A stretch of DNA of 64,000 bases, taken from contig OZ281499.1 of the NCBI GenBank assembly GCA_965637545.1, positions 16,244,001 to 16,308,000 of the forward strand. The letters run 5' to 3'. Every line of letters starts with the position of its first letter. Position 1 is the stretch's first letter. A program made the position numbers and the translations under genes. Shown piece after piece: positions 37,601-61,636 of the stretch. The DNA is from Phallusia mammillata (Eukaryota). The notes under the pieces were generated by a model. That model was not told where the DNA came from. It made no database searches and saw only the letters and a program-made list of their open reading frames with translations.

Positions 37601-39817
37601 ACAGCTGCGACAAACTTAATATAACATTGGTTTTCTTGTGTGCACTTAGGGAAACGCTCATTCAAAATAATCCGTTAAATTTAGCTCGAAGAGGGGGGAC
37701 GCTTTTTCTTTTATTGTGAAAAATGAGACCACATCTATTCAATGACTTGGGATTTTAAGTGCCAAGTTACTGTTGGCAATATTTGTTTAAATCGAAAGGT
37801 TCTACGATATTTCCTTTCCTTTAAAATTGTGATAATTTGAGTGAAATTAATTTACATGCGAAAAAAGTGAATATATTTATAGACAGCGTTTAATTGCGTT
37901 GTTACTCGACAGTTTATTTTTATTCTCCTTTCCCTCGGGAAACACTGTCATGTTTCTGACAACAAACAACAATTTCGTTAGATCGCTTTTATCGTAGAGT
38001 TTGTCAACATTCGATTGCAGTACAAACAGCTTCCTTCCCCAAATAAACTATACACCATGATGTGATATAAGCACTACAAATAAGTTTATTAGTTTGCTGT
38101 AGTTGTGGAAGACAATTACGAAGAAGTTAAGCATTGAATATTTAGTAACAAATACGCGATTGCCTGATTATAGCTAATACTGGTTCTTATATTTTGTGTG
38201 ATATTGCCGGACCCTTATAACTTATCTGTGAGTGTTGTGGTTGTTGCCGCGTGAACGATTATTAAATCAGTTATATATCAAACAACCTAAATAGGCTATG
38301 TGAAGTTTTAGTTGTGTGATCCTGCTTAGTACAGTTTAACACTGAAAAATGTTGATTTGTATGTTTATTTGACTTCCTTTTAAGGGCCTAAAGTAGGATC
38401 TCAAACTTAAAACGGTAGTATTTATTTTGCAATGAAAAATGGTTAGAAAAAAAGTGTTTTCTGGAAATGACAGCATTTCCCAGAAGCATATAACAACAAA
38501 CTAGTGCTTTTTGAGGTCTGTTTGGGTTCTTGCCATTTTGATAACGAACGCTAATCCGGTGTTAGTATCTCACATGTGAAGCAGCAGGTGTTGTGATCGA
38601 CCGCTTTTGTTTGTGTTTTTCCGGTGCGGGCCGATGGAAAAACAACGTCGCTGAATTTCACACGCACGCGGTCACACACGAGAAAGCAATTGAACCGCAT
38701 TCGTTTACTACATCAGGTCATATTGAAGCAAATGGCCTCTTTAGCCTTTCATGATAATCTTAAAAAAACTCAATTATTCAATTATTTTCTATTTTGATTT
38801 AGAAAAGAATCTAATTTGTAAACGATTATTCCGAAAAACAGTTATTGCTGATGTTTCAATATAATATCCTATACGCATGAGCAAAAGAATGAAGGGAAAG
38901 AAGGTTTTCCTAATGGCATTTTGTTGTTATATTTTTGTGTTATAGGCAATGTAAATTGTACTATTGCACTAAAGCTCTCTTTTTGCATACCCCAAAGATT
39001 TTCTACAAAACCTACTTTTTCGGTTAAATTCGGATAGGACACATCTGACACCTGGTGGTTTAAAGAAATTGGTGGTACACTTTAATTTACGACAGTTTTA
39101 AAGCGGCCTCAGTAATTTTGCAAGCATGTTAGAATCGTCGAAACATTTCTCCGTACCATCACGAATAACGATGCAATGAAACATAAACATGACCTTACAT
39201 GGTTTTAAATGCTTTTCACACAAATAGCAAAACCATGCGGTATATTTTATTGCTGCAATAAGAGAAAGCATGTTGCAATGAAAAACGAAAGTAAAGCACC
39301 GCAGCGAGATGTATGCTGTTAAAAAAATGCAAAGGTAAACGGATCTTATTAAACAAAGAAAAATTGCATGCAACCTATTGTATTACTTGGGTGATGCGAA
39401 ACTAAAAACGTACGGCCGTAGGATAGAATATAGATTTTGCACGTTTAAACACAAATTTGATTTGCTAACAAAGCGGTAATGGAACAGGTCGTTGACGATC
39501 AACATAAAATAAGCCACAAACTGTGTATTGCTGATAAATTAACAACATAGGTAAGCGCAAAAAATAACAAAGTGTCGGAAATATCTAGGATCAACGATTT
39601 TAAATCTTCTTGGCCTAAAATGCCAGTCAATAAGTTTAATTTTTTCTTAAATTTGTTCCGAACATGATTTAGAGTTCTAGACCATGATCTAGTAAAATTT
39701 TTAATTATGCATTATTATGAATAAAAACAGATCTGTCACGTTTGTAGTATACCAGAGATAAAAACGAACTTCGCTAGTTTCAACACTGAAGGTGGTGAAT
39801 CAGCGCCTTGCTTCTCT

Positions 39818-39933
39818 CTAGCGGACATAAAAGTCCTCACAACCGTCTTCTTTTGGCCGCACGAGGCCACCAGAGCAGCATACCGATGACGTTGCGAAAT
39901 AGAAGGTTTGGTGACAGCATAACCGATTATCCC
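39818..39933 (-). CDS. FN3 gene exon 14, terminal (DNRLCCHQTFYFATSSVCCSGGLVRPKEDGCEDFYVR*)
   Basis: Acceptor TCTTTTGTAAAACAG; continues the CC repeat; TAG stop at 39820-39818. Confidence 0.85.
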
Positions 39934-42900
39934 CTGTTTTACAAAAGACATACTATAGTTTAATTTTCACATTGAGTTGTCCATAGCCTACCTTATTTGG
40001 CTTATAGTTTATACTTTATCAAATAGGCCTTAAAATCTTGATAAACCTATAGTTGCGTTTTTAAAGTTAGATTCATACAAAATCAATTGCACATTTTATT
40101 TGACAACTTCGTTGTGCGCTGTTGTATAAAACTTGATAAAAAACGTTTATTATTGTTGGTAAAGCTCTTTTTGTATCTAAATTATAAATGTAGCCTACTA
40201 TGGTTGACCTAGGTCAGTATTAGGCGTTTAACAACTATATAGGTAAAGTAAGTTTCAATGCAAGATTTGCATGTACTTATTTGGCTGTACAACGCAACCA
40301 TATACCGAAGTAACGTTTTTAAGATTGCTAAAAATCTCCAATCTAAATTGTCCAACACGCTATCAGAACTGTTTATTTGTAGTCTACACCACGGGAATTT
40401 CTAGCCCCACTCGTCTTACAGGTAATCAGAAATACCAACCTTCTCTGGCAAGGATCTCTCCGCAGCATTGTTGATTAGCCTTGTTATAAGGTCTGTTTCC
40501 GCAACATGAATCTGGTGTCACCACATCCGGCCTTGGTACCCTTCGTCCGGTTCCTGACAAACAGTTGATATAAACATTCAAAGACTTATGGACCAATAAA
40601 AATAAACAACTGGAAGAACCGGCGAAATTACAGAATCCAAACTGAAAAGTAAAGAAACGAACGCATTCCTAAACACAACCTGGCTACTTGATCTTCTTCG
40701 GTTTACTAGTTTATCTGCTTTAATTTTAAACCTGCCACGTGTTAAAACGAGTCAACAACATGTGAATCTGGAATATACCTTTAGGAGCCGGTAAAACATG
40801 TTAAATGGACTAAAACTTAATCTGAAATAATGAAACACGGTTTGTCTCATTAAAAACTTAGGCTGTATAGATAACCTCTCCGTGGTCATTTTTTAAACTC
40901 ATAGGCCTACATGCTTTTCAGTAGTTTGCAATGTTACCTTAAGGTCACGGTAGAAAAATATGTTTGTTGGGTTGGTATTTGAATCCCGAACGTAAAACGA
41001 ATTTACGTTGTACGGAGAAATATGTTTAATAACTGTAACACCATTAAAGATCGGTACTTTCCAATTTTATTGATACGTTCAAGATTTGGGAAAGTGTTAT
41101 TGGCTTTAAGCTATATAGAAACGAAAAAGGGCAAACTTCCCTTTTTACAAGGACTGGAAGAGCCATATATTTTTAAACGGCAGTATTCATTTGCTGTTAG
41201 CGTTTAATATCGCTGGTTTGGCCTAATCGTTTTGAGTGAATAAATAATGTGGTTTCTTACTTGCTAGAATACAAGGTAATGCTCGTCTCGGCAAGTTCGG
41301 AGGATCGCCGACTTTTCCCGTTTCGGGATCCACAACAGCTCGGGAGGAAACAACAAGTTCTGGACCTTCCAGATAGTTACTCACACACCTGCTGTGAATT
41401 GTGAACCTCTCCTCGCGGGGTACATTGGGTAAATAGATTTCCTAAAACAAGAGATTGCAAAACATGACTACTTCTGTATGGTAAGCACTTAAGGTTTTTC
41501 TGTCAAATAAGGGCAGCTTTCGCGCCTTCAAGCTTGTTTAACCCTGTTTCTTGCCTTGCGGCGACTATTAAAATATATTATTATTAATAACAACTTATTA
41601 ATAATAATGAACAAACAGATTGTGTGATATAAGCAGAGCAGGTTGTGGCAAAACATTTCAATTTAAAATGATGTTTTACCACCGAAAAAGAGTTTCAGGA
41701 AAGATTGAATTCATGCCCAGTGCAAAATGTTGAACTAAATAGGTGTTTTTTTCAGGAATGCCAATTTCACGCAATGTAATTATTCAGAGTTGTGAACAGG
41801 CCTGAAATTGCAGCCCGGACCCGAAAGTACAGGCACTAACCCGAAAGCTACTTAAATTGATCAAAACAAATACTGACACAAACTGTAAAGTCAGGCCCGA
41901 ATCAAGCCTTACAACGCTGTAACTATTACTCTATGGGAAACTGTTCTGCTAACCTGTCCGATAAAGTGATATCCGGGTGGTTTGCTTTCAGGATTCGGAC
42001 TAACGCTCACTTTCAGTTCAGGACATTTGCCCACTGACGGACTGTCATATACCACAATTATTCCCCCGTTGGTTGGATCCAATGTGGTTATTCTCGGCTT
42101 AGGAGGTACTGAGAACAAGATGTGTTAAAATGTATTGTTCTCGTGGACAATTGCAGGTATTTTGTATTTAAATGTTTATCCTTTATGTTCCCCATGAGGT
42201 ATGATGGACATGTGTTCAGTTTTGCGATAAACAAGTTATAGCAAAATTTTGTACATACTTGGTAGCCCATAGATAACCATATTGAGTGCACAAGAAACTA
42301 TACGTACTTGTTGTTTGAACTGTCTCGGCCTGCAGTACAGGTAATTCTCCTGGTTTTTGCGTGTACACCGTAAACTTGTACGTCACGCCGGGAATTAGTT
42401 GTTGAACTTTCACATTCACAAGGAAATCTCCTGATCTAACGCGTGTGGTGCCAGTTTGTCCAGAAGTCGCGTCCTACAAATGACAAAATTAAAAGGACAA
42501 TAAGAAATGCATTCTTGGCTTTAGTTGAGTATGGTGAAAAATGATATTGTTTGTCCTCAATGTTTGGACTGACCTGTTAAACACGTCATACATAAATTTA
42601 TTTCGAACATTTAAAGGAGTAGCAAAGATGTACTCAAAAATGCTTTGCAAAGAGTTTTGCGCTGTCAGACGCTATTTACTCATGAAAAATTCCTGTAGAA
42701 CAAATTACCAAAATTTTCAATACAACTTGTACCTTCAATGAAAATAACATTACTTTTTAATGTAAGTTAGTTCATGACAATTTGCCAAGTTTTGTTTTAC
42801 AACTAAGTTTATTTAAATATAATTTTGTCAATGTTTTAAACCGACATTTAACAAAGTAGAACATACACAAAAGTGCGCTACAAAAACTTTACCATATTTA

Positions 42901-45900
42901 AACGCTAGTCGACTTTCATATCGGGTTTACCTCAATGTCGACGTATCCAATCAAGTATTCAATTTCATCGCTTGTTGTAAACGTTGCAGGTTGGTCCCAT
43001 TGAAGCGTGACGAAATCTTGGCCGTATGCAGTAACTTGCAAAAGCATAGGAGCAGCTGGTTCTGAACAGAAAAAAACGGTACAACGTTCTTTAATTGAGG
43101 CAAAACTGCTGTCAAACTGGCCGCTAGGGGGGTAAATCTGGCAAGCAATGTTTATGCTTTTATTGAGACAATAAATTTGTTCAACAAATTACGCTGATTA
43201 CTATGTGATATTAGCGTAACATTATGAGTCTAACTGCTACATTCGGCAATATTAATAGTAATTAAAAAACGGTTAAATCATGATTGGAAATGGTTTCTGG
43301 CCCGCGTAAAATCGAATAAAATACGACTCTCAGCACCAAACTTGGTACTCATGATCTATATTGGTCATTGGTACTTTACATGCTCGTTTAATCGGGTCGT
43401 TTTTTCAAACATGCACGTAATTCGCAAATTTGAAAACAACACACTAGCTGTGGATGAGCTGGACTGTAATGAACTTGACCGGAACATACAGAGCGCAATT
43501 CAATCCAGTATCCACCGCAAGGAAACAGTGTTTTATATTGTATTGAAAGGTACGCTATTTGTTTGTTAGAACATGCATATGTTTTATAAGCAACATTTTT
43601 TGCAAGAATTTGAACACTAGCCCAAATGTTTCATAGAAACTAATCGCTACTTGATCCCATAGCCAGAAACGGTTCTATTTCGTCTGTAACATCGCGTAAT
43701 AAGATTGACATAAACAAAGGTTGAAACAGAACACCCCTTGTAACCAATGTCTAAAAAGTCAGTTCGCACGAGAACATAAAAAGCTTAGAATATGTGTGAC
43801 CGGCGCCTACTGTTGAAACGCTGATGCTAATTGGTTTTGTAAAATTGAGAATATACAACGCCCAAAAGCCGATAATTTGAAGCTTATTCCAACGTTTTAT
43901 CTACTGGGCGTCTGGCCAACAACGTGCCACTAATTTAGTGAGTCGATTTACAAAATTTATTTAAACCACCCAAACCGTCAACTATAATTAGTTTACTATA
44001 GTAACTAAATATAACATGTACGTGGAATTGGCAATACGCTTAGACAGTTCATTTTCTGAGAGATCTGGCGATATAAGTTCATGCAAAACTTTTAGTTATT
44101 CGTCCCTATGATTTTAAGATTTATACCAGTATCTTATTTGGTTCATTATAGTCTTCATCCACTAAGCAACGAACTGGTATCTTGTAGTTTAAAGTACAAG
44201 TCTGGCGATATACAATTGATACATTTCAAGCACGATACAATGACCTTATGTAGCCTAACCTGATCACCTTAAACAAATCTTTTTCCTAAAACCATGGTCA
44301 TTAACTTAGTAAACTTACATCAAATTATGATATGAAAAACGTACTTGTGTTGATTTCCACTGTGTATGGTTCCCAGCTTCTTACCCCTTTGGATACCGAA
44401 TATACTTTCAATACGTATTTTGTAGAAGGTTGCAATCCGGTAAAGGTATAAACATTAAAGCGATTGTAAATTGGGTCGAGAGATGGAGGGCCTACAACCC
44501 CGTGCTCCGGATCAAGGACAAATTCTCTGAAAGTGGAGACGTTTTTTGGTAAATGCAATTCACTGTTTTACACATACAAGACACATACAAGCCAGAAAAA
44601 TTGTGACAAATTAATTTACTTGAAAATGACATCAGAGGATTATTGAAACATCATGATTTTTCTTATGTATACTTGCTTCTCTGTTTGTTGTTAGTTTTAG
44701 CATGCAAGAATATTTTTTTGTAATGTTTGCACAAACTTTTTCAGTTGGGTTGTTTATGAAAACAACTCGAATTACTTTTTTTCTGATTAATACTAAATTA
44801 TTTCTTGGTTAAAGTCGTTCACTTAATTTAGCCTTTTAATTTTAACTGACAAAACCCGAAATCCTTTTGCAGAAAAAATTACACTTAAATCCAGTAATAA
44901 CGTGCAACAAAAGTGTTAATCCTATGCTTGTACAAACAAAGTCTGAACTTGTTATGATAAACACGAGACACTTACAGTTTGTCGAAAATGCCCTTCAACG
45001 GTCCCAAAGTGTTAACACTTGCATGTGTTGCTCCCACATCTGTTACCTCCACTGTATAAGGCGTGGCTGGTGCTAAAACAGATGGACCAGTTCGTTGACA
45101 AATATTTTAGAAGTCAGCGAAATGTAACGTCTTACTATACTTTTGTGTTTGTTGAAATGTTTATGTACATGATCATGAACGCAAAACGTTCTTGTCACGT
45201 TTTAAGATAGATGTTTGGGCAAACCATGGTTGCAAATGTTAATTAGCAGCCTGCTTAATTTGAGGATTGCAAACAATATTTTTTTAAGAGAAAAATTGAC
45301 CAAAAACAAACCAAGAAGTTTTATAAACCATAGGTTGTTCAAAATATGACCGCAATCAAATCATTTTCATCTTTACAAAATGTATATCAATATTATTGCA
45401 AAAATATCATTCCTTTGTTTCAGTCCATTTGACAAGCATAAAAAATTGATCTCATAAAAAAAATAACAAACTTACGGATTATCGCAGTAGCTGTAATTGG
45501 AGTGCTGTATACCAAATCATACAGAGGACCTGTTTTCGTCCGAACGCTTATGGTATATTGCTGACCTTAAACACAAAATACGATAACGTTATGACAAAGT
45601 CTGCGCTTAAAACGTGATTAGCCGGAATTCAAAGGCAGTCAGACAGTTTGTTTTGACCGTGAATCGTTTGGTTGTACTAAAAACAAAACCAAGGATTTCG
45701 CGCGTCTGTGGAAAATGTATAACCGTATATGCGCAACACGTTGTACAGGATTAACTGATAAACGCGTAGATTTTACAAAATGTATGAGCATTGCGAATTA
45801 GAGTTTGTAATAAAATGTCGCGATGACTCAGAAAAGCCCGTTACTGAAAAGAAAAGTTACAAATATTTAACGAAACGTAACTAATAAAAATGTCAACAAT

Positions 45901-48900
45901 AATGTTTCATATTTGTATAAATGCTTTATTTTGGTTAAGCTTATGTCCTAATCTGGCATACCATTTTATTACATACCTGGAGTAAGTCCTGCGAAAATTC
46001 GACTTGTGTGATCTGGTTCTTCGTCCTTATTAGGTTGCGGATTTAACATTGCACAATCTTCTTTTGGTTCAATACGAACATCGTATCCGTTTAAACCTAA
46101 ATAATAATATTTCAAGTCAGTTTTCCAATTTTTTTCCAGATTCAAATCAGCTATAGTAAGATTGATATTACCATCAAAAATCCAAAAATTAACCTATAAT
46201 TCAAGATGCTATATTTATAACTGCTGAAAGAGAAAACAGCGCATCTTTGGAAAGTGAAAGTCATTCGACAAATATGTTTATATTTGGGTGTTTCCTATTG
46301 AGTTGTTTTGTTAAGCTGTTTGCCAGGTAATACTGCTTTTTGACACAACACTAAACACCTCTGGCGCCCATTAATCATTGTTTTTAATGCAGTCCGGAAT
46401 AGGTCTTGCCCTACCCTTTTTCGACTTTATCACCGACGCCAAATATTATACTGTATACAAGACCTGTCAGTTTCTTTACACTAAGTCAATTGCCTGTCGC
46501 CAAAGTCTTGCTCATAGATGTTGGCTAATCAATCATTTCCGTGTTAAAAGGACATACCAAGAAAATTACATTGTAAACACCAAGCGTTAGACATAATTTG
46601 TCATATTAAATAATCGAGAAGTACTTTGTTTAGCAAATTTTAATGCAAAAAAGCACCAGTTTTTAGCACAATTTGTTTTACTTATACCATTTTTGACGAT
46701 GGTCTGTTTCACTTTATTCTTTACATTTTTGATCAGGTTATTTTACGCTGTGTTTGATCAATCAAAATTTCCACCGCACCAGGAGAATATTAGTAAAACG
46801 CCTTATGTTGAGATTGCGTTGATAGCAACTGACTTTGACATTTAGGAAGATTGTAAACTGGGAAACAAGCAGAAAGTTACCCGTGCGCCCATTAACCACA
46901 GAGTAATGCTGCGTTGCCGGTTTGGCGAGTTGCTGCTTTAAACATTCAACAGAGAAATGCATTTAGGGTTCTGATTTTTAAACGTTGGCTAGTAAAATAA
47001 ACTTTGCATTTGGAAATCAATTGAACCTCACAGAAATTTCGTGATTTTATCTGTTTTGAAAAGATTTCAAATGCTTCAGATTCGAATTAAACATTGTTAA
47101 CACTGACTCAAAAGCAAATAACTTATTATTAAATATAGAATTGACATTTTTGTTTTGTGCATTAGGTATAAACAAAACACAAATTTCATTTTTCGATTTA
47201 GGATGATTTTTATTTGAATATAACTATTAAATTACGTCTGATTCCAGTTTAGATAGAAATTACCTGTTCTGCCCTCAGGGGCCTCCCAATCAACGTGCAG
47301 ACCAACCACTGGTGCTGAATATGTGTCTTCGTAATCTCCAAGTTTCACCGCTAACTTCACCTCACGAATGGGTGTGAGTTTAAGCGATCGTGGTTGCCGG
47401 GGCTCTGAAAAGGCAAAAAAAGAAGATCAAAATTAGCCTTTAATTAAATGTCAAAAGCAAAAAAAAGATCAAATTAGCCTTTAATTAAAACTTTGAGCGC
47501 TTTCAGTATGATCGCGTCAATTTGACTGGAATATAATTATTTAAGTACTTTTTCTGTTTATATGTCAGCACTTTCGTACACGAAACGAAGTTTAAAACAA
47601 TGTTATCAAACAGCGTTAAGTTTCTGCCCATAAGTGTTCGCTTTAAGCTGTTTTAGGCAGAACCGAAAGTCCCAATAGGCCGTCTTGTTTTTCATGCCCG
47701 ATATACTTCAACGTTTTAGTATTTTTATTTTTAAAAGTGTTTTTTTAAAATAGGGCCGCAACTGGTTTTACCTAAATTTGATTTTTTTATGGCGCCTTTG
47801 GGCAAACTGTTTTGTCTCAATTTAACGGATCCGCCTAATATAGTCACGTAGAAGAGGTATTCTCAGCAACGTTACATGTTTGCACAAGGGATTGCCGACT
47901 CCACCCACGAAGGCTTTAAAACGTCAATTTTGAATGTTTGTTTGCGGTGGAAAGTGCTTCAGTATACGGTCGTATGTAGTACGCTGAACTGTTTCACGTT
48001 TCTCATTAAGCCAAAATATTTTTCTTTATTGGTTTAGAGCTTCTGTTAGTTTGGGTTTAGTTTATTCTGCGAAAAATTACAACTTAATGCGTTTCGGAGA
48101 AATGTAAGTTGATTGTTGCTGAAAGTAGAAGCCAAGTTGGATGATTTAAAAAGCATATAACAAACTTCAAATGTGTGAACAATCGCATTTAGTATACAAT
48201 ACTTACAATCGAATCAACACAATTTACGTTGTTTCCAACAACGTTGTTGCTTTATAAATTGAGGATTTTGTTTTATTATTTTTAGACTATAACTTATGTA
48301 CAGATGTGACGCCCTAATTTTCTTTGGTTTGTATAAAGAAACCAATGTATTTCATTCGTTTTTGTGTACTTTCCACCTAACCACTTTAAAAAATCCCCGT
48401 GACACGTAATTTCCAAAAAAACTAGGTAATTAAAACTGTAATAACGTAGTTTAAACAGGTTATTAACAAACATGAAATCCATGAAACTAAAAAAAACATG
48501 CAAAACGTAGTTAAAGTTTTAAGAAAGGCAGAGATTTAGCCCCATTAACGTCCTAAGTTAAAAACCCAGGTAAGTTACTAATAAAGTTTTCACTTTATAC
48601 AAAATAAAAAATAAAACATTTCACTTTTGTACAAAATAAAATTTTTACATTTAAACAAATTTCTTACCACTCCAAATATGGAATCGTAGAGGTCTTGATC
48701 GTCTTCTATCTGCGGTTTCTCCACGTAACGTCACTGTATAAGCGATACCTGGTTGAAGGTCTTCGAACGTTCGAGAAGTGTCGTCCGGTCGCTCAGGCGG
48801 AAGAATCGTGGCTCTTGGAGATATCTACAACATCATATAAATACAGGTACTATAATAAGGGTGGTCAAATATGAACATACAGCAAAAGCAGTACGAGAAT

Positions 48901-50171
48901 GCAACAATGGTGTATTATCATTCAGGGCCTATTTTGAACTTACAGAGCCTGAAGCCAAATGTACAGTGTGGTCAAAATGAACCTTGAACAAAGGTGTCAT
49001 TAAGTTGTAATCAACGTTACAACCTTAGTGACTGTATATTACTACATATGTGGATACTATTAATATGTTATTGAGAGAAATTGCTTTTTATCGGTACGTA
49101 TGGGAGCTATAGTCTGTATATTTGTAAAACTTAGCAACGTATTTTATTGGAAAACTTAAAGAAGCTTTAGATAATCTATTAAAAGCTTTTGGAAAAGGCC
49201 ATCTTGTTAAAGGTTATGAAAAGTAAAAGCTGCGAAAACTAAAAGCTGTGTGACATTACAGCACACCCATGCAGATATTGTATCAAAAGCTGCAATTAGA
49301 GGTTATGTGTTTACCGCCAACACACATTTTATCGCCTTTCTTGAAGCTTACGTGCCACAGTTCTTGAAAATGTCAAGGCGCTACTTAGAGCAAAAATTCT
49401 GCACGTTTTTCCAGCACAGACCATTTAATGCCTTATGACACAATTAAAGGTTTTTTTTAAAAATAGTAAGAAACAGGCAGGTCAATTAAAGTATGTAAAG
49501 TGGCATTAAAAAATAAAAAACCTTACGCTTTATATCAATATATTCGTATATCTGATTCTTGGTAAATGACCTTGCAATTGAATCAATGCAAACCACTTTG
49601 TTTGTATGATCTAAGACTTGCCTTTACGCCGAATTTGGTGTATTTGATACTCGGCGGTTGTTTCCAATTTACACGAACCATTGTGAGCGTTCTTGCGGGA
49701 ATGGTGATTCCAATCGGAGTTGGTAATCTCTGTGCCCAACCTACGAAGCAAAATGGCTTAACGAAATTGACAACAACAAGATAAACAAGTTATCGAAGTA
49801 CAATTGTGCACACCGAGTGTCCAAAAATTACCAACATTTAATTTCTCAATTTAATTGTTGCCTACTTTTTAATCGTATTCAAAATTAGCTTGTAAACATA
49901 ACAAAACCAGTTTAAAAAAGAAAGTATAAAAAACGGCGTATGAACTTAGTACGAAAAGGCTCATCAAAATAGAGAAACAAAAACTTGCTTTTTAAGTTAA
50001 AAAAATATGACTTAATTGAGTTGAATATTGATCAAATGTGACATTATAGGTACTTCCCTAAAACTTTCATCACAAAACAATCTCTTTGGGTTCTTTTTAC
50101 CAAAAATAAAAATACAACTTACCTAGTGCTAAGACACTGCAAACCAAAACTGTAAAATATAATCCAGGCAT
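39818..50171 (-). CDS. Secreted protein, 613 aa: signal peptide + five fibronectin type III domains + C-terminal galaxin/usherin-like di-cysteine repeats
   Basis: complement(join(50123-50171, 49622-49740, 48668-48824, 47264-47404, 45977-46096, 45476-45565, 44976-45072, 44345-44526, 42931-43061, 42308-42473, 41930-42108, 41261-41441, 40440-40553, 39818-39933)) = 1842 nt, open throughout. FN3 hallmarks (W-x-x-P, L-x-P-G/S-x-x-Y). No TM segment, no RGD. Confidence 0.9.
40440..40553 (-). CDS. FN3 gene exon 13 (DSCCGNRPYNKANQQCCGEILARE)
   Basis: Acceptor CTGTTTGTCAG, donor G|GTTGGT; di-cysteine repeat. Confidence 0.85.
41261..41441 (-). CDS. FN3 gene exon 12 (FN3-5 C-half and linker)
   Basis: Acceptor TCTTGTTTTAG, donor A|GTAAGA; EIYLPNVPREERFTIHSRCVSNYLEG. 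Confidence 0.85.
41797..41903. mobile_element. Fragment of a DNA transposon end with (G/A)CCCGA subterminal repeats (hAT-like), in an FN3 gene intron
   Basis: CAGGCCTG...GCCCGGACCCGAAAG...AACCCGAAAG...GTCAGGCCCGA; no TIR pair or TSD found. Confidence 0.4.
41930..42108 (-). CDS. FN3 gene exon 11 (FN3-5 N-half)
   Basis: Acceptor CTTGTTCTCAG, donor AGA|GTAATA; phase 1-0. Confidence 0.85.
42308..42473 (-). CDS. FN3 gene exon 10 (VQQLIPGVTYKFTVYT)
   Basis: Acceptor CATTTGTAG, donor A|GTACGT; phase 0-1. Confidence 0.9.
42931..43061 (-). CDS. FN3 gene exon 9 (FVTLQWDQP)
   Basis: Acceptor TTTTTTTCTGTTCAG, donor GAG|GTAAAC; phase 1-0. Confidence 0.9.
44345..44526 (-). CDS. FN3 gene exon 8 (YTFTGLQPSTKYVLKVYSV)
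   Basis: Acceptor CTCCACTTTCAG, donor A|GTACGT; phase 2-1. Confidence 0.9.
44976..45072 (-). CDS. FN3 gene exon 7 (FN3-3 N-half)
   Basis: Acceptor CTGTTTTAG, donor CT|GTAAGT; phase 1-2. Confidence 0.85.
45476..45565 (-). CDS. FN3 gene exon 6 (QQYTISVRT...TPITATAII)
   Basis: Acceptor TTTTGTGTTTAAG, donor C|GTAAGT; phase 1-1. Confidence 0.9.
45977..46096 (-). CDS. FN3 gene exon 5 (LNGYDVRIEP...IFAGLTPG)
   Basis: Acceptor ATTATTTTAG, donor G|GTATGT; phase 1-1. Confidence 0.9.
47264..47404 (-). CDS. FN3 gene exon 4 (FN3-2 N-part, GLHVDWEAP)
   Basis: Acceptor TTTTTTTGCCTTTTCAG, donor G|GTAATT; phase 1-1. Confidence 0.9.
47413..47489. repeat. Tandem duplication of the branch-point/polypyrimidine segment upstream of FN3 gene exon 4
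   Basis: GCAAAAAAAGAAGATCAAAATTAGCCTTTAATTAAA (47413-47448) recurs at 47457-47489. Confidence 0.85.
48668..48824 (-). CDS. FN3 gene exon 3 (FN3-1 C-half, TFEDLQPGIAYTVTL)
   Basis: Acceptor GATGTTGTAG, donor G|GTAAGA; 157 nt, open. Confidence 0.9.
49622..49740 (-). CDS. FN3 gene exon 2 (FN3-1 N-half, ...VRVNWKQPPSIKYTKFGVK)
   Basis: Acceptor TTTTGCTTCGTAG; donor AAG|GCAAGT (GC-AG). A weaker GT donor lies 6 nt earlier. Confidence 0.85.
50123..50171 (-). CDS. FN3 gene exon 1, signal peptide MPGLYFTVLVCSVLAL
   Basis: ATG, hydrophobic core, phase-1 donor G|GTAAGT. Confidence 0.85.
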
Positions 50172-52869
50172 TGCAGCCCAATCCAAATAATTTGTATTTA
50201 CAATCAGACGATTCAAAAAGTCCAAAGACAGATCTTTCCTCAAAACCCTCTCAACACGTCAGAATAAAATGGCTCGTGTAATTTCTACAGTCCCATTAGT
50301 ATATATAATATCTTAGTACGTTCTACTCTCTATCTGGCAAAAAAATAAAGTGTTTGGCTCACATGACACAATAACTCATATTTCGATTAGTTCTTAATAT
50401 TTCGCCACATAAACACAGTTTTCCGGTTTCATAATGGCCTTCGCCACAATATAGCCACAAAACGCGCTTCAGTGACAAGCGCCTACTTGGCTTGTAAATC
50501 ATCTGTCTAAAACAAAACACTGTTGTTAGCTCGTCAATACAGTTTCTTCTCGGCTGCACGCGTCCACAAAACTTTAACTTCTAACGAAAGCGCAGCATCC
50601 TTGTCCGGTATAAACAAATGCAAACTTCTCTCTAAATCAGCGAATCGCAAAGCAGCAACAAACTAAATTGTATTTCTTTGCTCTCACACAGGTCGCTTTA
50701 AAAGCTTTGATTATGCCCCGTCGCTATATTAGTCTGGAAGTCTTAACGGACTAAAGTAAACAGACTGGACATTAACTTGACCGCTAAACTGACCGTCGAG
50801 ACTAATTGCTCGTTTCAAAAATGCCTAATTACTGCTTTATAGACTGCGATGAACTAATTTAAGTATAATAGCAGGCATTTTAAAATAAGTTCATCGTTTA
50901 GTTTCTTGAAACGTTTCTTATGTCCACAATGTTTTAAAGGTTTTTTTCATAGTAATACTTTTGCCAACAAACAAACAAACAGAACAATACGGTTTAAAAG
51001 TATTACCGCTTTGAAAATATTTTGTTCAAAATTATTATCGTTTATGACTAATTACAAATTTTGTTCACATCTTTTTCGGGTCAAAAAAGTACAAAAACGA
51101 AGTACTTTAAATCCATTTTTGCTTGTCTTAACCTGACCAAACGACACCTGTTCAAACTAAAGCTAACCTTTCTTGTTCAACACCAAAATCTTGCCCTTGG
51201 CGTCTGTTCTGTTTTGCATTTTGAGGCATCACGATCGACTTTTCTTATCGGCATCCACGTTTGTTTTATACAAAGGTCGTCAGATGCCTTCAGGCACCAA
51301 ACGCGCGTTTACGCTCCGCAAGAAGTCTGCCACGTTGTGGTGGTGCCATGTTTTGGGGGTCGTCGTTGCGTTATCTTGCCCTTCAAGGTCAAATTCTTGA
51401 GCAATTTGACATGGTTGATGCTTGCCGTGAAGGTCATTACTAAAAATCGCGTTCGCGTGAAATGACTGGAAGTTTGACTGAATACGAAAGTCTCAATTTT
51501 CGTTCTTGAAGATCCAGTTCGAAAGCAATTACAGTTGAACATAGTCCTAAGTGTATTAATTAGGGCGCAATCAACACATTATACCAGAACTTAATTCTAA
51601 ACACTAGGCAAACTATTATGCGTACAACCATACCTATCTCAAAACTTGTAGAAGAGCATGAAAATAATACTGATATCTGAGCGAAGATCGACGTATTGCA
51701 TTGAAACACTTGAATATTGAACATTCGAGAGATGAAATTGATGTAAAACATGCCACTTAGTTTCGTGCGTCTGTTATACGGCGAACTTGTATATTAAACT
51801 ACTTGACTCTCCTAAAACGTGGAAAATCAGTATTAATTAAACCTTTAAAAACGAGGCGACAGTTTTAAGCCAAGTGGGTGTTGATTATACAGCTTTACAT
51901 TTGGCCTAAGATCTATCATTTAGGTAAAACTACGGAAAATCGTTTGCCCAAACCGGTTTTTGCTTCGTGCAGGTAAAATAGCTGAGATGCAGTTTTCGCT
52001 GTGAAATCGGATTTAAGATGGATCAGTCGACTGCGATTGCGACTATTGAATCGTTAATGTTTACGCCCATAAACCACTGCTGTCAAAGCACGATGGTATG
52101 TACTTGTATTCTTTACTGCTGTATGATTACTTGATATGAATTTATGAGTGGTTTGTCGACATGCCACCAGACTTTTGGATTTTTTTTGGCTGTGCATCTC
52201 TGTTGAGTTGGATACTTTATTTTACCTAATTCTAATTTTTCAAGTTTAGAAACACTTAGGTATACATATATCATTGGTTAATTTTATAATAAATCTATGG
52301 CCTGTTGAGATAAAAACGACGTGGCTATGTTTATTTGTTTAGCGTAACGTAATGCTTCTCAACATTTTCAACGCTTTCTCTACATCCCCAATTTTTGGTG
52401 CAAATTAATGACGAGTAGCGTTCCAACTTTTTTACTTCTTTTTAAACAAACATAAAATCGAGCTGCAGGAAGTTGTAAAGCATTAACGAGACCAGGGGGT
52501 TTAAAAGCACTGGTTGAACGTTTGGGCACGTAACTTTTGTCGTGTTTCAGAGCCGAAACTTGTAATCATATACTGCTGCGTTTTCTTAAGTCTTTTTTCT
52601 GTACTGCTCCTCAACAGCTTAGTGATCCATGAAAACCTCCTTGAATATACAAAATTTGTTAGTGGTTGAGCCAAATGACACTAATTACCCAATCACAGAC
52701 TTTCTTGTTAGAAGTACACGCAACTGAAAAAGTACTTATATTGGCCGCTCAAAGTCATATTTCACCAAATTTACTTTGTTCTTGTATTTTGGTCTAACTG
52801 TCCAATTTTTTGCTCTCAGGGTTCAAACTCAAGATGTTTGCGAATCCTAATTAAGGTTTTTATGCCTGT

Positions 52870-58279: not shown

Positions 58280-58543
58280 GGTGTTGGTTCGGAGTATGTA
58301 AATGATAACACAGCTGAAGCTGCAGACATACCAAATTCAGAAGTAGATTACATTCACCATTACGAAACTGAAGCTCAGCCAGAAGCTGACTTACCGCAAC
58401 CTCCGGAACATCTGTACGAGTTTGAGACTCACTCCTCTGCATCATCAGCAAGTGGTAAAGAAGAAGCCCCAAAGTCTCCAGTTGGAATTGCTAGCATGGC
58501 TGAATTGGTTGTTCAAGGCATTGAGAATCTAAAAACAGAAGAT
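58280..58543 (+). CDS. CLIC: CLIC long isoform, acidic exon (GVGSEYVNDN...MAELVVQGIENLKTED, 88 codons)
   Basis: Strong acceptor TTTTTTTTTACCAG, donor GAT|GTATGT; open in phase 0; Glu/Asp/Pro-rich. Also has an internal ATG in good context. Confidence 0.8.
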
Positions 58544-58702
58544 GTATGTAACACTAGGTTGTATTGTAGTCCATTCAGATTTTTGTAACTTGAGTCAAAA
58601 ACATAACATGATATTTGTTCTTATATTATGTATTGGTATAACATGCAAGGTATTGATAAATTTAAATGGCAGCTTTTTATTACAATAGAACCTAAATTTC
58701 AG

Positions 58703-58774
58703 GAGGACCCCGAGGTTAAGACAATCAATTGTGAAGGAGAAAAAACAGAAAAGACTATTTTTCTCTTTGTAAAG
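58703..58774 (+). CDS. CLIC: CLIC beta-1 exon variant A (EDPEVKTINCEGEKTEKTIFLFVK)
   Basis: Acceptor AAATTTCAG; ends in LFVK at a phase-0 donor AAG|GTTAAA (weak). Confidence 0.6.
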
Positions 58775-58973
58775 GTTAAAACTCAAATTTTAGTTGACCA
58801 CTGCGACCTGATTTTATTTATTTTAGGATTATTTTGAAATTCTAACCCAGATTTTTGAAAATCTTATTTAAGCATTATTTTATCAGCTTCATAGAAAACA
58901 TGATTCTACAACATCTAAAACTGCATGCAACATTATTTTATTTTTATTGTGTTGATGCATGTTGACTGAACAG

Positions 58974-59078
58974 AAACCAGAAAAGGACAACGCAGTAGTT
59001 GTCAATGGCAATGGTGCCTGTGCAGACAGTGTGTCTTCCAACAAACGACCTGATCCACAAATTGCTCTTTTTGTGAAG
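58974..59078 (+). CDS. CLIC: CLIC beta-1 exon variant B (KPEKDNAVV...NKRPDPQIALFVK)
   Basis: Acceptor GACTGAACAG, donor AAG|GTAGGT; DPQIALFVK matches the CLIC N-terminal motif DPEIELFVK(AG). Confidence 0.8.
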
Positions 59079-61636
59079 GTAGGTTCAGCACTGACAGAAA
59101 CTGGTTTTAATTCAAATTTGTAAATGGCATGTTCACTGCACAAAAAGGGCAACACTGTTTCAAGGTGTATTGTTTGAATAGGTCATTGTTTAGATACTGT
59201 TATCACAATTTGTTGTACCCTTATAGCAGAGTACAACTCAAATGTTTTGAATTTTTGGCAAAAATTCAAAGTTTTCTGCAACAGCAAGGTGCCAATACAG
59301 TAATGTGGTTTTATCTGCAGCTAAATGATTGCTTACTTTAAAAAACTCTGGTATGAGTATGGTGATTGATATAAACATTAAAACATCTAGTAAACCTTTC
59401 TGATTTGGTTACTTGTCATTGATATTTTCACTAGGACAACTGATTGGTAAAGGGTAATTATAACACATTATCTGAAATATGTTGGTTTGGATGAAGTATT
59501 AAAACATTTGATTTGTTCAAAGTGGATGTTTTTCCAAGTTGAATTGATACTATTGGTCTCGTGGTTTCGTAGGTGGCACTTCCCACAAGGGGGTAGTGTA
59601 ATATTTAATAACCAATGTAAAATCATACCTGCAGGATAAAGCTCCTAGTATGTTGTTATTCTTTTTGTATGAAAGCAGACTTTGTTTCTTTACTATGTGA
59701 AAAGTCTATCTTACCTTCTTCAAACATGTTTTTACTTCTCTTGTTCAACTGTTTGTTTCAGGCTTAGTTTACCTACTTTGTTCAATGGTTTTGATGTGAA
59801 AGTTGGCTTGGAGTAGTAAGAGGTAGGGAAGGATCAAAGAGATTTGGAAAATACAGGCAATGACATCCTTTAGGGATTCCCGTGCAGGAAACGTGCATTC
59901 TTATAATCCCTGCAGACAGGTTTCCTTACATTTTCTGACAGTGGTTATTTCCAGTGTGAGAAAGGCAGTAGGGTTATTAATTTACCTTATTACATGTACA
60001 TAGCTACGAAACAAAGGACCGTGATTTCAAACTGGGGCGTCAACGACACAAAAAGGGCAAGGGTGGCGCTCATCAGACGTAAAACCATCCATCAAGTTGT
60101 TAGTTAAAGGAGTTTGCACAAATATTATCAATATTTGTTGCACTTACCGAACCTTCCTTAGTCAAACATCCAGAATCTTCGATTGTTTCCATCATACACA
60201 GTTTGCGCGCTTCAAAATCTTTCGAAACAACATAAACGTGCCGGCAATCCGTTGATCGATGCTAAAACGTTGGAGTACCTTGTACAAACATCGAAAATCG
60301 TTGTTAACAGAGACATTCGGTCCAGAACTAATCAAATCACCGGTGTCTAGCTTAATGATTACCGAGACTTGGTGAGCCACACTTGTATGCCGAAGTTAGT
60401 ACTGTGCACTCCCTGTCAGCACGAAGCCGTCATCATGTGTGCTTCCTATGATGACGACCTTCGTGCTCTTGAATAAATAATTAGATGTCATGCCGTCGAC
60501 CGCCCGGTATATCGCTATGCCTCTTTCGACCGTCGAACTAGCAGCTACGTGCGATATACGAATCGGAACTAATTGCAGTCGCTTTGTTGATTGCAAATAC
60601 ACATGTGTTAGGGCTAACTTGCGAAAATCCGTACGAACAAGTGCACACTTATTCACGAAGTAAAAGTTTCGAGACGTGATGAAGCCGCAGGGCTAGTATA
60701 GGTCACAGCGCTCGGCACGCTGTTAAGTTTCAAGCGCATTCAGTATTGAATAGCCGCAAGGTATTTTCACCGGCAAGGCGATACAGCACCATGCAATCTA
60801 TCAGCTTGTTTAAAAGTCGCCGTGGAAATTGTCAGGTGGTTTGCAGTCGGTGTGGTGTTGGCGTGTAACGTGGCGTTTGATGAAGAATACAATGGTTTAA
60901 TTGCAGCTTTCGTCACAATTGAACATGTCGAAAAGTTGTAGATTAATCCTCGGAGTTATGGCAGTAAGCTGAACGGCAAGTGCTGAATAGGACCCCTGCT
61001 AAGTTGCTTATGTGGGGAGCAGTAGCGCTCTGCCTTGATTTGCTCCGGCCATGCAGAAAATGTTTGCTTTGCTCTTCAATTTTGAAAGGTCCTTCGCCAG
61101 AGCCACAAAACAGCCGCGCCGGCCTCTGTTGGAATTTGTGGCGTTAGTGTGCAAAGATTAGTTTGAAAGTTTCGTTGAGTACTGTCTATTGTCGACGTGG
61201 AAACATCTTCTCCGACTTTTGCTGTGGAGAAGCCAGGATTACTTAAGCAGTGAAGGATAAGGTTTTTATTGCTAAATAACATGTCTAGAATGATGTTTTA
61301 CCACTAAAGGAAGTTCTACTGCAAGCTTATCAAAGATGTTTTGAATTCTTACCAAACGTATGTAAGCTCGTTTAAATACGCTTTACAACTAGATTCCAAA
61401 CAGATTTTGAAAGATTGTAAAATAAAGTGCTATTTTTAAACATAACAAGCATGTTATCACTACGTTTCAAACGTGAAATAGCAATTTTGTCAGCCTTTTG
61501 TTTCAATGTTGTTGCTTAACTAGGACTGTAGGACGTAGTTTTAAGTGCAACTGTGGTGCAAGGGTTTAGGTTTTGCTTTGTTGGCCACTCTGTCTGTTGG
61601 TCATTGAACCGAAACTGAAACATCAGGCAAGCGAAA

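What the first reader, a model, noticed from the sequence alone, without database searches (positions are those of the whole stretch)
39818..50171. Secreted 5xFN3 protein capped by a galaxin/usherin-like di-cysteine module
The model is complete and phase-consistent. The C-terminus CCGNRPYNKANQQCCGEILAREGDNRLCCHQTFYFATSSVCCSGG has four regularly spaced CC pairs with the CCG-x3-Y-x6-CC pattern of coral galaxins and the Cys-rich segment of usherin (USH2A). Usherin is a giant laminin/FN3 membrane protein and galaxins are essentially repeat-only. I do not recognise a small, anchorless FN3+galaxin protein as a named family. Candidate lineage-specific matrix, tunic or adhesive protein that may crosslink through its Cys tail.
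Basis: partly seen in the sequence, partly recalled or inferred. Interest (0 to 1): 0.7.

Follow-up and report, generated by a model that had tools for sequence, protein, structure and literature searches.

The report
Sea-squirt FN3 protein with galaxin cap
This is a real, expressed sea-squirt gene for a secreted protein made of five fibronectin-type-III domains ending in a tiny galaxin-type cysteine module; it is conserved in other sea squirts, where databases mislabel it "fibronectin" or "tenascin-like", and nobody has studied it.

Summary
A 14-exon minus-strand gene runs from ATG 50171 to stop 39818. RNA-type contigs from two studies confirm the last eight exons (all GT..AG). They end about 570 nt past the stop, near an AATAAA, so there is no further exon or membrane anchor. 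My orthologue-guided model is 603 aa, not 613.

Both cap exons hit Pfam Galaxin_repeat weakly. The caps of seven orthologues pass its threshold.

Collinear orthologues exist in Ciona intestinalis ("fibronectin isoform X1-3") and Styela clava ("fibronectin-like/tenascin-R-like"), plus five unnamed transcripts. Those names are wrong: no FN1, FN2, EGF or fibrinogen domains are present. Adjacency to CLIC is shared with Ciona, which carries two tandem copies; this genome has one.

The cap models as four stacked beta-hairpins. Its best fold matches are galaxin-repeat clusters, and no solved structure matches. The invariant, even cysteine count argues for a closed internal disulfide ladder, not the proposed cross-linking tail.

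Verdict: an uncharacterised, apparently tunicate-restricted family that combines two known modules in a new small format. Tissue, ligand and range outside tunicates are untested. Moderate-low interest.

The parts
50123..50171 (-). Exon 1: start codon and most of the signal peptide (MPGLYFTVLVCSVLAL...; cleavage probably after GWA in exon 2)
   Evidence: First in-frame ATG after an upstream stop. GTAAGT donor. 19-residue Kyte-Doolittle mean of 1.71 at the N-terminus. Orthologues start the same way. The position is predicted; the reads laid did not cover it.
49628..49740 (-). Exon 2: first half of FN3 domain 1
   Evidence: Collinear with orthologue residues about 19-58. Splice signals.
48668..48824 (-). 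Exon 3: second half of FN3 domain 1
   Evidence: Pfam fn3 at 18 bits. Aligns to the orthologues from 'ISP...' onward, which sets the acceptor at 48824.
47264..47404 (-). Exon 4: start of FN3 domain 2, the long A/B hairpin
   Evidence: 51% identical to Ciona P0109 residues 102-154. The orthologue model has two 17-residue strands here.
45977..46096 (-). Exon 5: middle of FN3 domain 2; holds the species-specific odd Cys168
   Evidence: Acceptor 46096 was chosen because it gives a gap-free alignment to all orthologues. Cys list.
45476..45565 (-). Exon 6: end of FN3 domain 2
   Evidence: The 3' end at 45476 is fixed by the RNA contig loose end, which maps to 45476-45505. 50-53% identical to orthologues.
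44976..45072 (-). Exon 7: first half of FN3 domain 3
   Evidence: RNA contig joints in four runs.
44345..44526 (-). Exon 8: second half of FN3 domain 3
   Evidence: RNA joints. Pfam fn3 at 23 bits. This exon was the query that retrieved the orthologues.
42931..43061 (-). Exon 9: first half of FN3 domain 4
   Evidence: RNA joints. Aligned.
42308..42473 (-). Exon 10: second half of FN3 domain 4
   Evidence: RNA joints. Pfam fn3 at 15.6 bits.
41954..42108 (-). Exon 11: first half of FN3 domain 5, with the conserved Cys of the G-x-C-P motif
   Evidence: RNA joints. The Cys is invariant in the orthologues.
41261..41441 (-). Exon 12: second half of FN3 domain 5 (conserved H-x-R-C-V Cys), then the linker with the single upstream Cys (…RRALPCILA)
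   Evidence: RNA joints. Alignment. The linker is disordered in the orthologue model.
40440..40553 (-). Exon 13: end of the linker plus the first galaxin unit (CC1 and CC2: CCGNRPY-x6-CCG). It is a symmetrical 114-nt exon.
   Evidence: RNA joints. Pfam Galaxin_repeat at 20.4 bits. Phases.
39818..39933 (-). Exon 14, coding part: second galaxin unit (CC3 and CC4), the final single Cys, and the TAG stop
   Evidence: RNA joints. Pfam Galaxin_repeat at 17.6 bits. Translation.
39238..39817 (-). 3' untranslated region of the terminal exon, with AATAAA at 39251-39246
   Evidence: The RNA contigs run unspliced to 39238-39292 and stop there. Poly(A) signal found.

Best explanation
The locus encodes a soluble, secreted extracellular-matrix protein of sea squirts.

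After signal-peptide removal it has three parts:
- A rod of five FN3 domains. The second has an elongated hairpin; the fifth carries an internal conserved Cys pair.
- A flexible linker of variable length.
- A minimal galaxin-type module of four beta-hairpins.

The ten invariant cap cysteines (one single, four pairs, one single) most likely form five intramolecular disulfides that chain each hairpin to the next. That would make a small, rigid, protease-resistant knob. I read this knob as a non-covalent docking module for a matrix partner, and the FN3 rod as a spacer or second binding surface.

The cap equals exactly one four-CC unit of the repeat-only galaxin-like genes found elsewhere in this genome. 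It is carried on two small exons, the first symmetrical in phase. This fits acquisition by exon shuffling onto an FN3 gene in a tunicate ancestor.

Shown: the gene structure, expression as spliced RNA, the domain make-up, conservation and synteny.
Inferred: the disulfide topology, the docking role, the matrix location and the shuffling origin.
For: - Spliced transcripts and a true 3' end.
- Signal peptide only, no second hydrophobic segment, in the window protein and in the orthologues with a complete N-terminus (Styela isoform X2, P0159, lacks the hydrophobic N-terminus).
- Five FN3 domains.
- Galaxin_repeat scores: 20.4 and 17.6 bits on the two cap exons; 31.6-38.3 bits on seven orthologue caps against a cut-off of 28.
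- Cap model: four hairpins with pLDDT 78-94, each CC on the first strand of a hairpin.
- Fold matches: the best ESM Atlas matches are Galaxin-like repeat clusters, TM 0.55/0.57 over 65 residues.
- Twelve cysteines are kept throughout the family, and Ciona's mature protein has exactly those 12.
- PMC12419799 describes galaxins as hairpins chained by CC disulfides, with one single Cys at each end.
- Orthologues occur in Ciona and Styela, with conserved exon order and CLIC adjacency.
- The three RNA/DNA differences seen are all synonymous.
- The genome's own galaxin-like loci carry the same CCG-x2-PYN-x6-CCG unit and match the cap profile down to E 1.5e-9.
Against: - No expression site, ligand or localisation is known. 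The runs are coded, and no paper on the gene was found.
- Disulfide pairing was not measured, and I could not read distances from the model.
- The upstream single Cys lies 20-35 residues before CC1, in a low-confidence segment. Its pairing is the weakest link.
- This species and the P0028 clade each carry one extra, non-conserved Cys. Some intermolecular bonding is therefore not excluded.
- The cap in the full-length orthologue model has only pLDDT 45-80.
- The joined window protein itself was never scanned or folded.
Confidence: 0.55

Rival explanations
1. Covalent cross-linker. The CC pairs form vicinal or local bonds. The two single terminal cysteines of the cap, or the whole tail, make intermolecular disulfides that polymerise the protein into a matrix or adhesive.
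For: PMC2726143 reports the older view (Fukuda et al.). In that view di-Cys motifs may close on themselves, leaving only the terminal Cys of galaxin free for intermolecular bonds. The window protein has 13 Cys after signal removal, an odd number.
Against: The odd cysteine (Cys168) is not conserved, and the mature proteins of Ciona and Styela have exactly 12. The cap models as a compact four-hairpin stack, as in the galaxin ladder of PMC12419799. The weak best match among solved structures is granulin. From my own knowledge, granulin's CC pairs form an intramolecular ladder.
Confidence: 0.15
2. Microbe-facing or immune effector. The galaxin cap binds or inhibits microbes at the epidermis or tunic surface, as reported for a squid galaxin. 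The FN3 rod would tether it.
For: [quoted passage not shown] 2014 on squid. [quoted passage not shown]
Against: The cap is only four hairpins and is not notably cationic (the mature window protein has pI 6.55 and the orthologues about 5).
Confidence: 0.1
3. Biomineral matrix protein, like coral galaxin or sponge calcarins.
For: It shares the Galaxin_repeat module. Galaxins and calcarins are skeletal matrix proteins (PMC12419799).
Against: The family is conserved in Ciona and Styela. To my knowledge these make no calcareous spicules. It has four CC pairs against 10-23 in galaxins and calcarins, and the bulk of the protein is FN3. PMC12419799 stresses that galaxin-like proteins in non-calcifiers have other roles.
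Confidence: 0.05
4. Incomplete or artefactual model: a fragment of a larger usherin-, fibronectin- or tenascin-type gene with further exons, for example a transmembrane segment.
For: Public names of the orthologues say fibronectin or tenascin-R-like.
Against: Transcript contigs end at a poly(A) signal with no further joint. There is an in-frame stop before the ATG. Independent orthologue models of 596-653 aa begin and end at the same points. Pfam finds only fn3-type families and Galaxin_repeat in them. Real Ciona fibronectin is a 3698-aa FN1/FN2/FN3/Ig protein on another chromosome (PMC5006582).
Confidence: 0.03

Closest known systems
Galaxin / galaxin-like proteins (Pfam PF24748 Galaxin_repeat, PANTHER PTHR34490), including sponge calcarins
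   Same: Both are secreted. Both have di-cysteine pairs at 11-13-residue spacing with the CCG-x3-Y-x6-CC motif, a single Cys at each end of the CC run, and a predicted stack of beta-hairpins. The Pfam model is hit and the best predicted-fold matches are galaxin clusters.
   Different: Galaxins are essentially repeat-only, with 10-23 CC pairs. Here there are only four CC pairs, about 55 residues, forming a C-terminal cap on a roughly 500-residue FN3 body. There is no link to a skeleton.
Usherin (USH2A) and the ~5000-aa usherin-like sponge proteins
   Same: FN3 domains and a galaxin-like di-cysteine region occur in one extracellular protein (PMC12419799, PMC4878875).
   Different: Usherin is a giant protein with laminin N-terminal, laminin-EGF and LamG domains, more than 30 FN3 domains, a membrane anchor and an internal Cys-rich region. 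This protein is about 600 aa, has only fn3 and Galaxin_repeat, has no anchor, and carries its Cys module at the extreme C-terminus.
Fibronectin and tenascins (the names given by automatic annotation)
   Same: Tandem FN3 domains whose sequences score best against fibronectin- and tenascin-type FN3 arrays.
   Different: No FN1 or FN2 modules, no EGF repeats, no fibrinogen globe and no RGD. Genuine Ciona fibronectin is a separate 3698-aa gene (PMC5006582).
Vertebrate FNDC7 (fibronectin type III domain-containing protein 7)
   Same: A small protein made of tandem FN3 domains. It is among the nearest clusters by language-model features, score 0.90.
   Different: Those clusters list no Galaxin_repeat. 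The relationship is a lead only and was not tested by alignment.
Granulin module
   Same: A small stack of beta-hairpins with four CC pairs flanked by single Cys. Granulin was the only solved chain reaching Z 2 against the cap model (6cku, Z 2.0, rmsd 5.1, 47 residues aligned).
   Different: Granulin has 12 Cys with much shorter spacing. The match is too weak to claim a common fold, and there is no sequence match.

Membership tests
Pfam PF24748 Galaxin_repeat | Profile score at or above the curated cut-off of 28 bits | tested here: inconclusive
   The window was scanned exon by exon only: 20.4 bits for exon 13 and 17.6 bits for exon 14. The joined tail was not scanned. All seven orthologue tails pass, at 31.6-38.3 bits.
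Pfam PF24748 Galaxin_repeat | Regularly spaced di-cysteines with a single Cys at each end of the run | tested here: met
   Cys at 524; 544/545; 557/558; 571/572; 584/585; 597 of the 603-aa model. All are present in every orthologue.
Pfam PF24748 Galaxin_repeat | Stack of short beta-hairpins, each beginning with the CC pair | tested here: met
   AlphaFold model of the Ciona orthologue cap: four hairpins, pLDDT 78-94. Best Atlas matches are Galaxin-like repeat clusters, TM 0.55/0.57. This was tested on an orthologue, not on the window's own joined sequence.
Coral galaxin sensu stricto / calcarins | Repeat-only secreted protein with about 10-23 CC pairs, found in a skeleton | tested here: not met
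   Four CC pairs, and about 85% of the protein is FN3. Skeletal location is not testable here.
Usherin | Laminin N-terminal, laminin-EGF and LamG domains, more than 30 FN3 domains, and a C-terminal transmembrane segment | tested here: not met
   Pfam on three orthologues gives only fn3-type families and Galaxin_repeat. There is no hydrophobic segment beyond the signal peptide, and the transcripts end after the cap.
Fibronectin | FN1 and FN2 modules flanking the FN3 array; C-terminal dimerisation cysteines | tested here: not met
   No fn1 or fn2 hit. A true fibronectin-like giant (P0012) shows them in the same scan type. Ci-Fn is a different gene (PMC5006582).
Tenascin | EGF repeats, an FN3 array and a C-terminal fibrinogen globe | tested here: not met
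   No EGF or Fibrinogen_C hit in the orthologues. A true tenascin-like protein (P0010) shows both.
Granulin | 12-Cys motif with four CC pairs at 5-8-residue spacing | tested here: not met
   Ten Cys at 11-12-residue spacing. No Pfam granulin hit. Structural Z is only 2.0.

The most novel reading that the evidence does not exclude
The four-hairpin cap may be the smallest natural, autonomously folding galaxin module. It could act as a polysaccharide or basement-membrane anchor, for example binding tunic cellulose, chitin-like glycans or collagen IV. It would then tether an FN3 rod in the tunicate-specific extracellular matrix. On this reading the family is a tunicate innovation made by shuffling one galaxin unit onto an FN3 gene. 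It would also offer a tractable handle on what galaxin and usherin Cys-rich regions bind. The only hints are weak. Some Atlas neighbours of the cap carry the fungal glucanase carbohydrate-binding family PF10645. Usherin is reported to bind collagen IV (PMC4878875). A Ciona galaxin-like gene is epidermal (PMC2726143).
Probability: 0.15. Interest if true: 0.55.

Novelty: new variant of a known kind. Interest (0 to 1): 0.3.

Why it matters
Galaxin-type di-cysteine repeats are widespread: corals, sponges, molluscs, squid and usherin. They have no solved structure and no known ligand. A family in which a single four-CC unit is kept invariant at the end of a simple FN3 rod gives a minimal, experimentally convenient version of the module. 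It occurs in Ciona, a genetically tractable chordate.

The finding also corrects misleading public names (fibronectin, tenascin-R-like). These could contaminate studies of chordate matrix evolution.

Beyond that, it is an ordinary case of domain shuffling among extracellular modules.

Tried and rejected
- Word-index protein searches with P0028, P0109 and the alignment A2 returned only the query's near kin. They missed even members of the alignment, because generic FN3 words filled the 8000-candidate limit. They say nothing about range.
- The one exhaustive search had to use a 60-aa FN3 exon. It cannot see distant relatives, and its top rows are giant tenascin- or fibronectin-like and bacterial FN3 proteins.
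- The Atlas feature search of P0109 gave only generic FN3 clusters and FNDC7.
- PDB searches for the cap found nothing by Foldseek, nothing by sequence profile, and only granulin at Z 2.0 by VIA-align.
- Pfam Carb_bind (PF10645) did not hit any cap, even at E 10. It stays a lead from Atlas neighbours only.
- Paper searches by accession, and for galaxin or FN3 with Ciona, collocytes, or tunic proteome, found no study of this gene.
- No tandem paralogue exists in the window or elsewhere in the genome at profile sensitivity. Styela's neighbour NUCB1 is not in the window.
- Two brute-force splice enumerations timed out and were replaced by scored sites plus orthologue alignment.
- The joined spliced model was deliberately not sent to any search, family scan or fold. 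Those were run exon by exon and on database orthologues. The joined translation was used only inside scripts, for length, phase, Cys positions and hydropathy.

Full report
**What is there**

The window is from a sea-squirt (ascidian) genome of about 240 Mb. Between 50171 and 39818 the minus strand carries a multi-exon gene. Open stretches in the three minus-strand frames show a hydrophobic start, a series of FN3-like half-domains and two Cys-rich pieces.

**Transcript evidence**

Six RNA-type runs hold 14-17% of the sampled words of the 9.95-kb stretch, about the exon share. I laid four of them, from two studies, on 39200-45199. Single contigs of 2508-2565 nt cross seven joints, all CT..AC on the plus strand, which is GT..AG on the minus strand. 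With canonical boundaries the exons are:
- 45072-44976
- 44526-44345
- 43061-42931
- 42473-42308
- 42108-41954
- 41441-41261
- 40553-40440
- a terminal exon from 39933 down to 39238-39292

The terminal exon holds the TAG stop at 39820-39818 and about 570 nt of 3'UTR. An AATAAA lies at 39251-39246, just before the contig ends. No joint leaves this exon.

The three differences between the RNA contigs and the genome inside coding exons are all synonymous.

**5' half**

Read laying is capped at one call of 6 kb, so exons 1-6 were not covered. The contigs' loose end maps to 45476-45505, which fixes the end of exon 6. About 840 nt of each contig lie upstream of exon 7.

I placed the remaining boundaries by splice-signal scores, tblastn against orthologues and a joint alignment. 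In that alignment every window exon tiles the orthologues in order, without gaps. The result is:
- E1 50171-50123
- E2 49740-49628
- E3 48824-48668
- E4 47404-47264
- E5 46096-45977
- E6 45565-45476

The model has 1812 coding nt, giving 603 aa. The ATG at 50171 is the first in frame after an upstream stop.

**Domains**

I scanned exon by exon and worked on database orthologues.
- Exon-wise Pfam gives weak fn3 hits on E3, E8 and E10.
- It gives Galaxin_repeat (PF24748) at 20.4 bits on E13 and 17.6 bits on E14, against a cut-off of 28.
- The joined translation, computed only inside scripts, has 14 Cys. One is in the signal peptide, and one is species-specific (Cys168). Two form a conserved pair in FN3-5 (444, 486). 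The other ten are in the cap: 524; 544/545; 557/558; 571/572; 584/585; 597.
- It has no N-x-S/T sequon and no RGD.
- Only one hydrophobic segment exists, at the N-terminus.

**Relatives**

An exhaustive HMMER search with exon 8 (60 aa) found, among many generic FN3 giants, three proteins of about 610-640 aa. They match the whole exon once, at the expected position. They are:
- P0109, Ciona intestinalis XP_018669934.1, "fibronectin isoform X2". Its isoforms of 653, 624 and 621 aa include UniProt F6QP88.
- P0048, Styela clava XP_039257108, "fibronectin-like" or "tenascin-R-like".
- P0028, an unnamed transcript, with four unnamed kin at 59-72% identity.

All have a signal peptide, an fn3 array (73-126 bits) and a C-terminal Galaxin_repeat. 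Cut out alone, all seven caps pass the Pfam threshold at 31.6-38.3 bits.

The alignment shows invariant A-C-C-x-R-P-Y-x6-C-C-G ... L-C-C-x2-P-Y-x6-C-C ... C. It also shows the FN3-5 Cys pair, in proteins only about 30% identical overall. The window has F-Y where the others have P-Y in the third unit.

The public names are misnomers. There are no FN1, FN2, EGF or fibrinogen domains, whereas real giant fibronectin- and tenascin-like proteins show them in the same kind of scan. Genuine Ciona fibronectin is a 3698-aa gene elsewhere (PMC5006582).

**Synteny and copy number**

In Ciona the gene lies next to CLIC, divergently, as in the window. CLIC exons match at 58.3-59.7 kb. In Ciona it is followed by a second tandem FN3+Galaxin_repeat gene of 596 aa.

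The window gene is closer to that second copy: 57% identity over E2-E8. In a small tree the two Ciona copies pair with weak support (81/85), with the 624-aa copy on a long branch.

This genome shows only the one locus at profile sensitivity. Styela has one gene, next to NUCB1, without the CLIC link within 10 kb.

**Structure**

The AlphaFold model of orthologue P0028, built with the family alignment, has mean pLDDT 79.9. It gives five confident beta-sandwiches at about residues 22-110, 111-223, 224-316, 317-415 and 416-505. The second has two 17-residue strands. A disordered linker follows at 508-548, then a hairpin-rich cap of lower confidence.

The Ciona cap modelled alone gives four beta-hairpins with pLDDT 78-94. 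Each CC sits on the first strand of a hairpin.

Its best ESM Atlas matches are Galaxin-like repeat clusters, TM 0.55/0.57 over 65 residues. Foldseek finds nothing in the PDB, and a sequence profile finds nothing there either. The wide structural search gives only zebrafish granulin at Z 2.0.

**Relation to other galaxin genes**

The genome holds repeat-only galaxin-like loci: a cluster at C4:609-625 kb, plus loci on C8, C7 and C1. Their exons usually carry four CC pairs with the same CCG-x2-PYN-x6-CCG motif. They match the cap profile down to E 1.5e-9, and there is no FN3 hit inside those loci.

The cap of the window gene equals one such four-CC unit. It is split over two exons, the first a symmetrical 114-nt exon. 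The intron between CC2 and CC3 is also present in Ciona. Exon shuffling is a reasonable inference for its origin, but I did not test it.

**Mechanism**

PMC12419799 describes AlphaFold models of galaxins and calcarins as beta-hairpins. In them the first Cys of each CC bonds the second Cys of the preceding CC, with one single Cys at each end. That is exactly the 1+2+2+2+2+1 pattern kept here.

I therefore favour a closed intramolecular ladder of five disulfides. That makes a rigid knob acting as a non-covalent docking module on a secreted FN3 rod (confidence about 0.55).

It is weakened by the even conserved Cys count and by the compact model. The odd extra Cys in this species and in the P0028 clade is not conserved in position.

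A biomineral role is unlikely, because Ciona and Styela keep the gene. An immune or microbe-binding role is possible but has no support here.

**Known or new**

FN3 with a galaxin-like region is described in usherin (PMC4878875) and in usherin-like sponge giants (PMC12419799). Ciona has a separate, epidermally expressed "similar to galaxin" gene (PMC2726143).

I found no paper on this small FN3+cap family. The genes are already in public annotation under wrong names.

I class it as a new variant built from known modules: real, conserved and uncharacterised, but not surprising in kind.

**Limits**
- Tissue of expression is unknown.
- Disulfide topology is inferred.
- Exons 1-6 rest on homology, not reads.

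Noticed in passing
L013:10001-27174 (Ciona intestinalis AP043578.1): Ciona carries two tandem FN3+Galaxin_repeat genes (624 aa and 596 aa) beside CLIC and a UbiE-type methyltransferase. The window gene resembles the second copy more. The first copy, which carries the public 'fibronectin' names, sits on a long branch.
   Followed up: partly
P0158 / P0109 / P0157 (Ciona isoforms, alignment A1 columns about 536-590): The three Ciona isoforms differ only by the number of copies of a Pro-rich unit (PPPPGEGANARDA) in the linker just before the Cys cap. Linker length therefore seems to be varied by splicing.
   Followed up: no
G000:C4:609000-625800, C8:7555000-7557600, C7:1171600-1172100, C1:12839400-12855300 (L001-L012): These are repeat-only galaxin-like loci with many exons, each usually carrying four CC pairs and the same CCG-x2-PYN-x6-CCG motif as the window's cap. 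No FN3 was found inside the fetched 3-kb pieces.
   Followed up: partly
window 58300-59700: CLIC exons match the Ciona CLIC gene, which lies divergently next to the Ciona orthologue. This is conserved micro-synteny. The UbiE methyltransferase that sits between them in Ciona has no match in the window.
   Followed up: partly
window 47264-47404 (exon 4); P0028 residues 117-152: The second FN3 domain of the family has an unusually long A/B hairpin, with two 17-residue strands in the model. It is about 110 residues long and is encoded by three exons rather than two.
   Followed up: no
window about 50334-50360: A polypyrimidine run followed by AG lies 162 nt upstream of the ATG. The RNA contigs extend 170-173 nt upstream of the ATG under the 603-aa model. 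This could be a trans-splice acceptor with part of a leader, but it is untested.
   Followed up: no
window 42136-42296 and 43353-43567: Two short, low-depth (3-4x) unspliced contigs from one run lie inside introns. They are probably pre-mRNA or DNA carry-over.
   Followed up: no
window 44409, 44412, 41391: Three positions differ between the RNA contigs and the genome in several runs. All are synonymous (codons 295, 294 and 484), so they look like ordinary polymorphism.
   Followed up: yes
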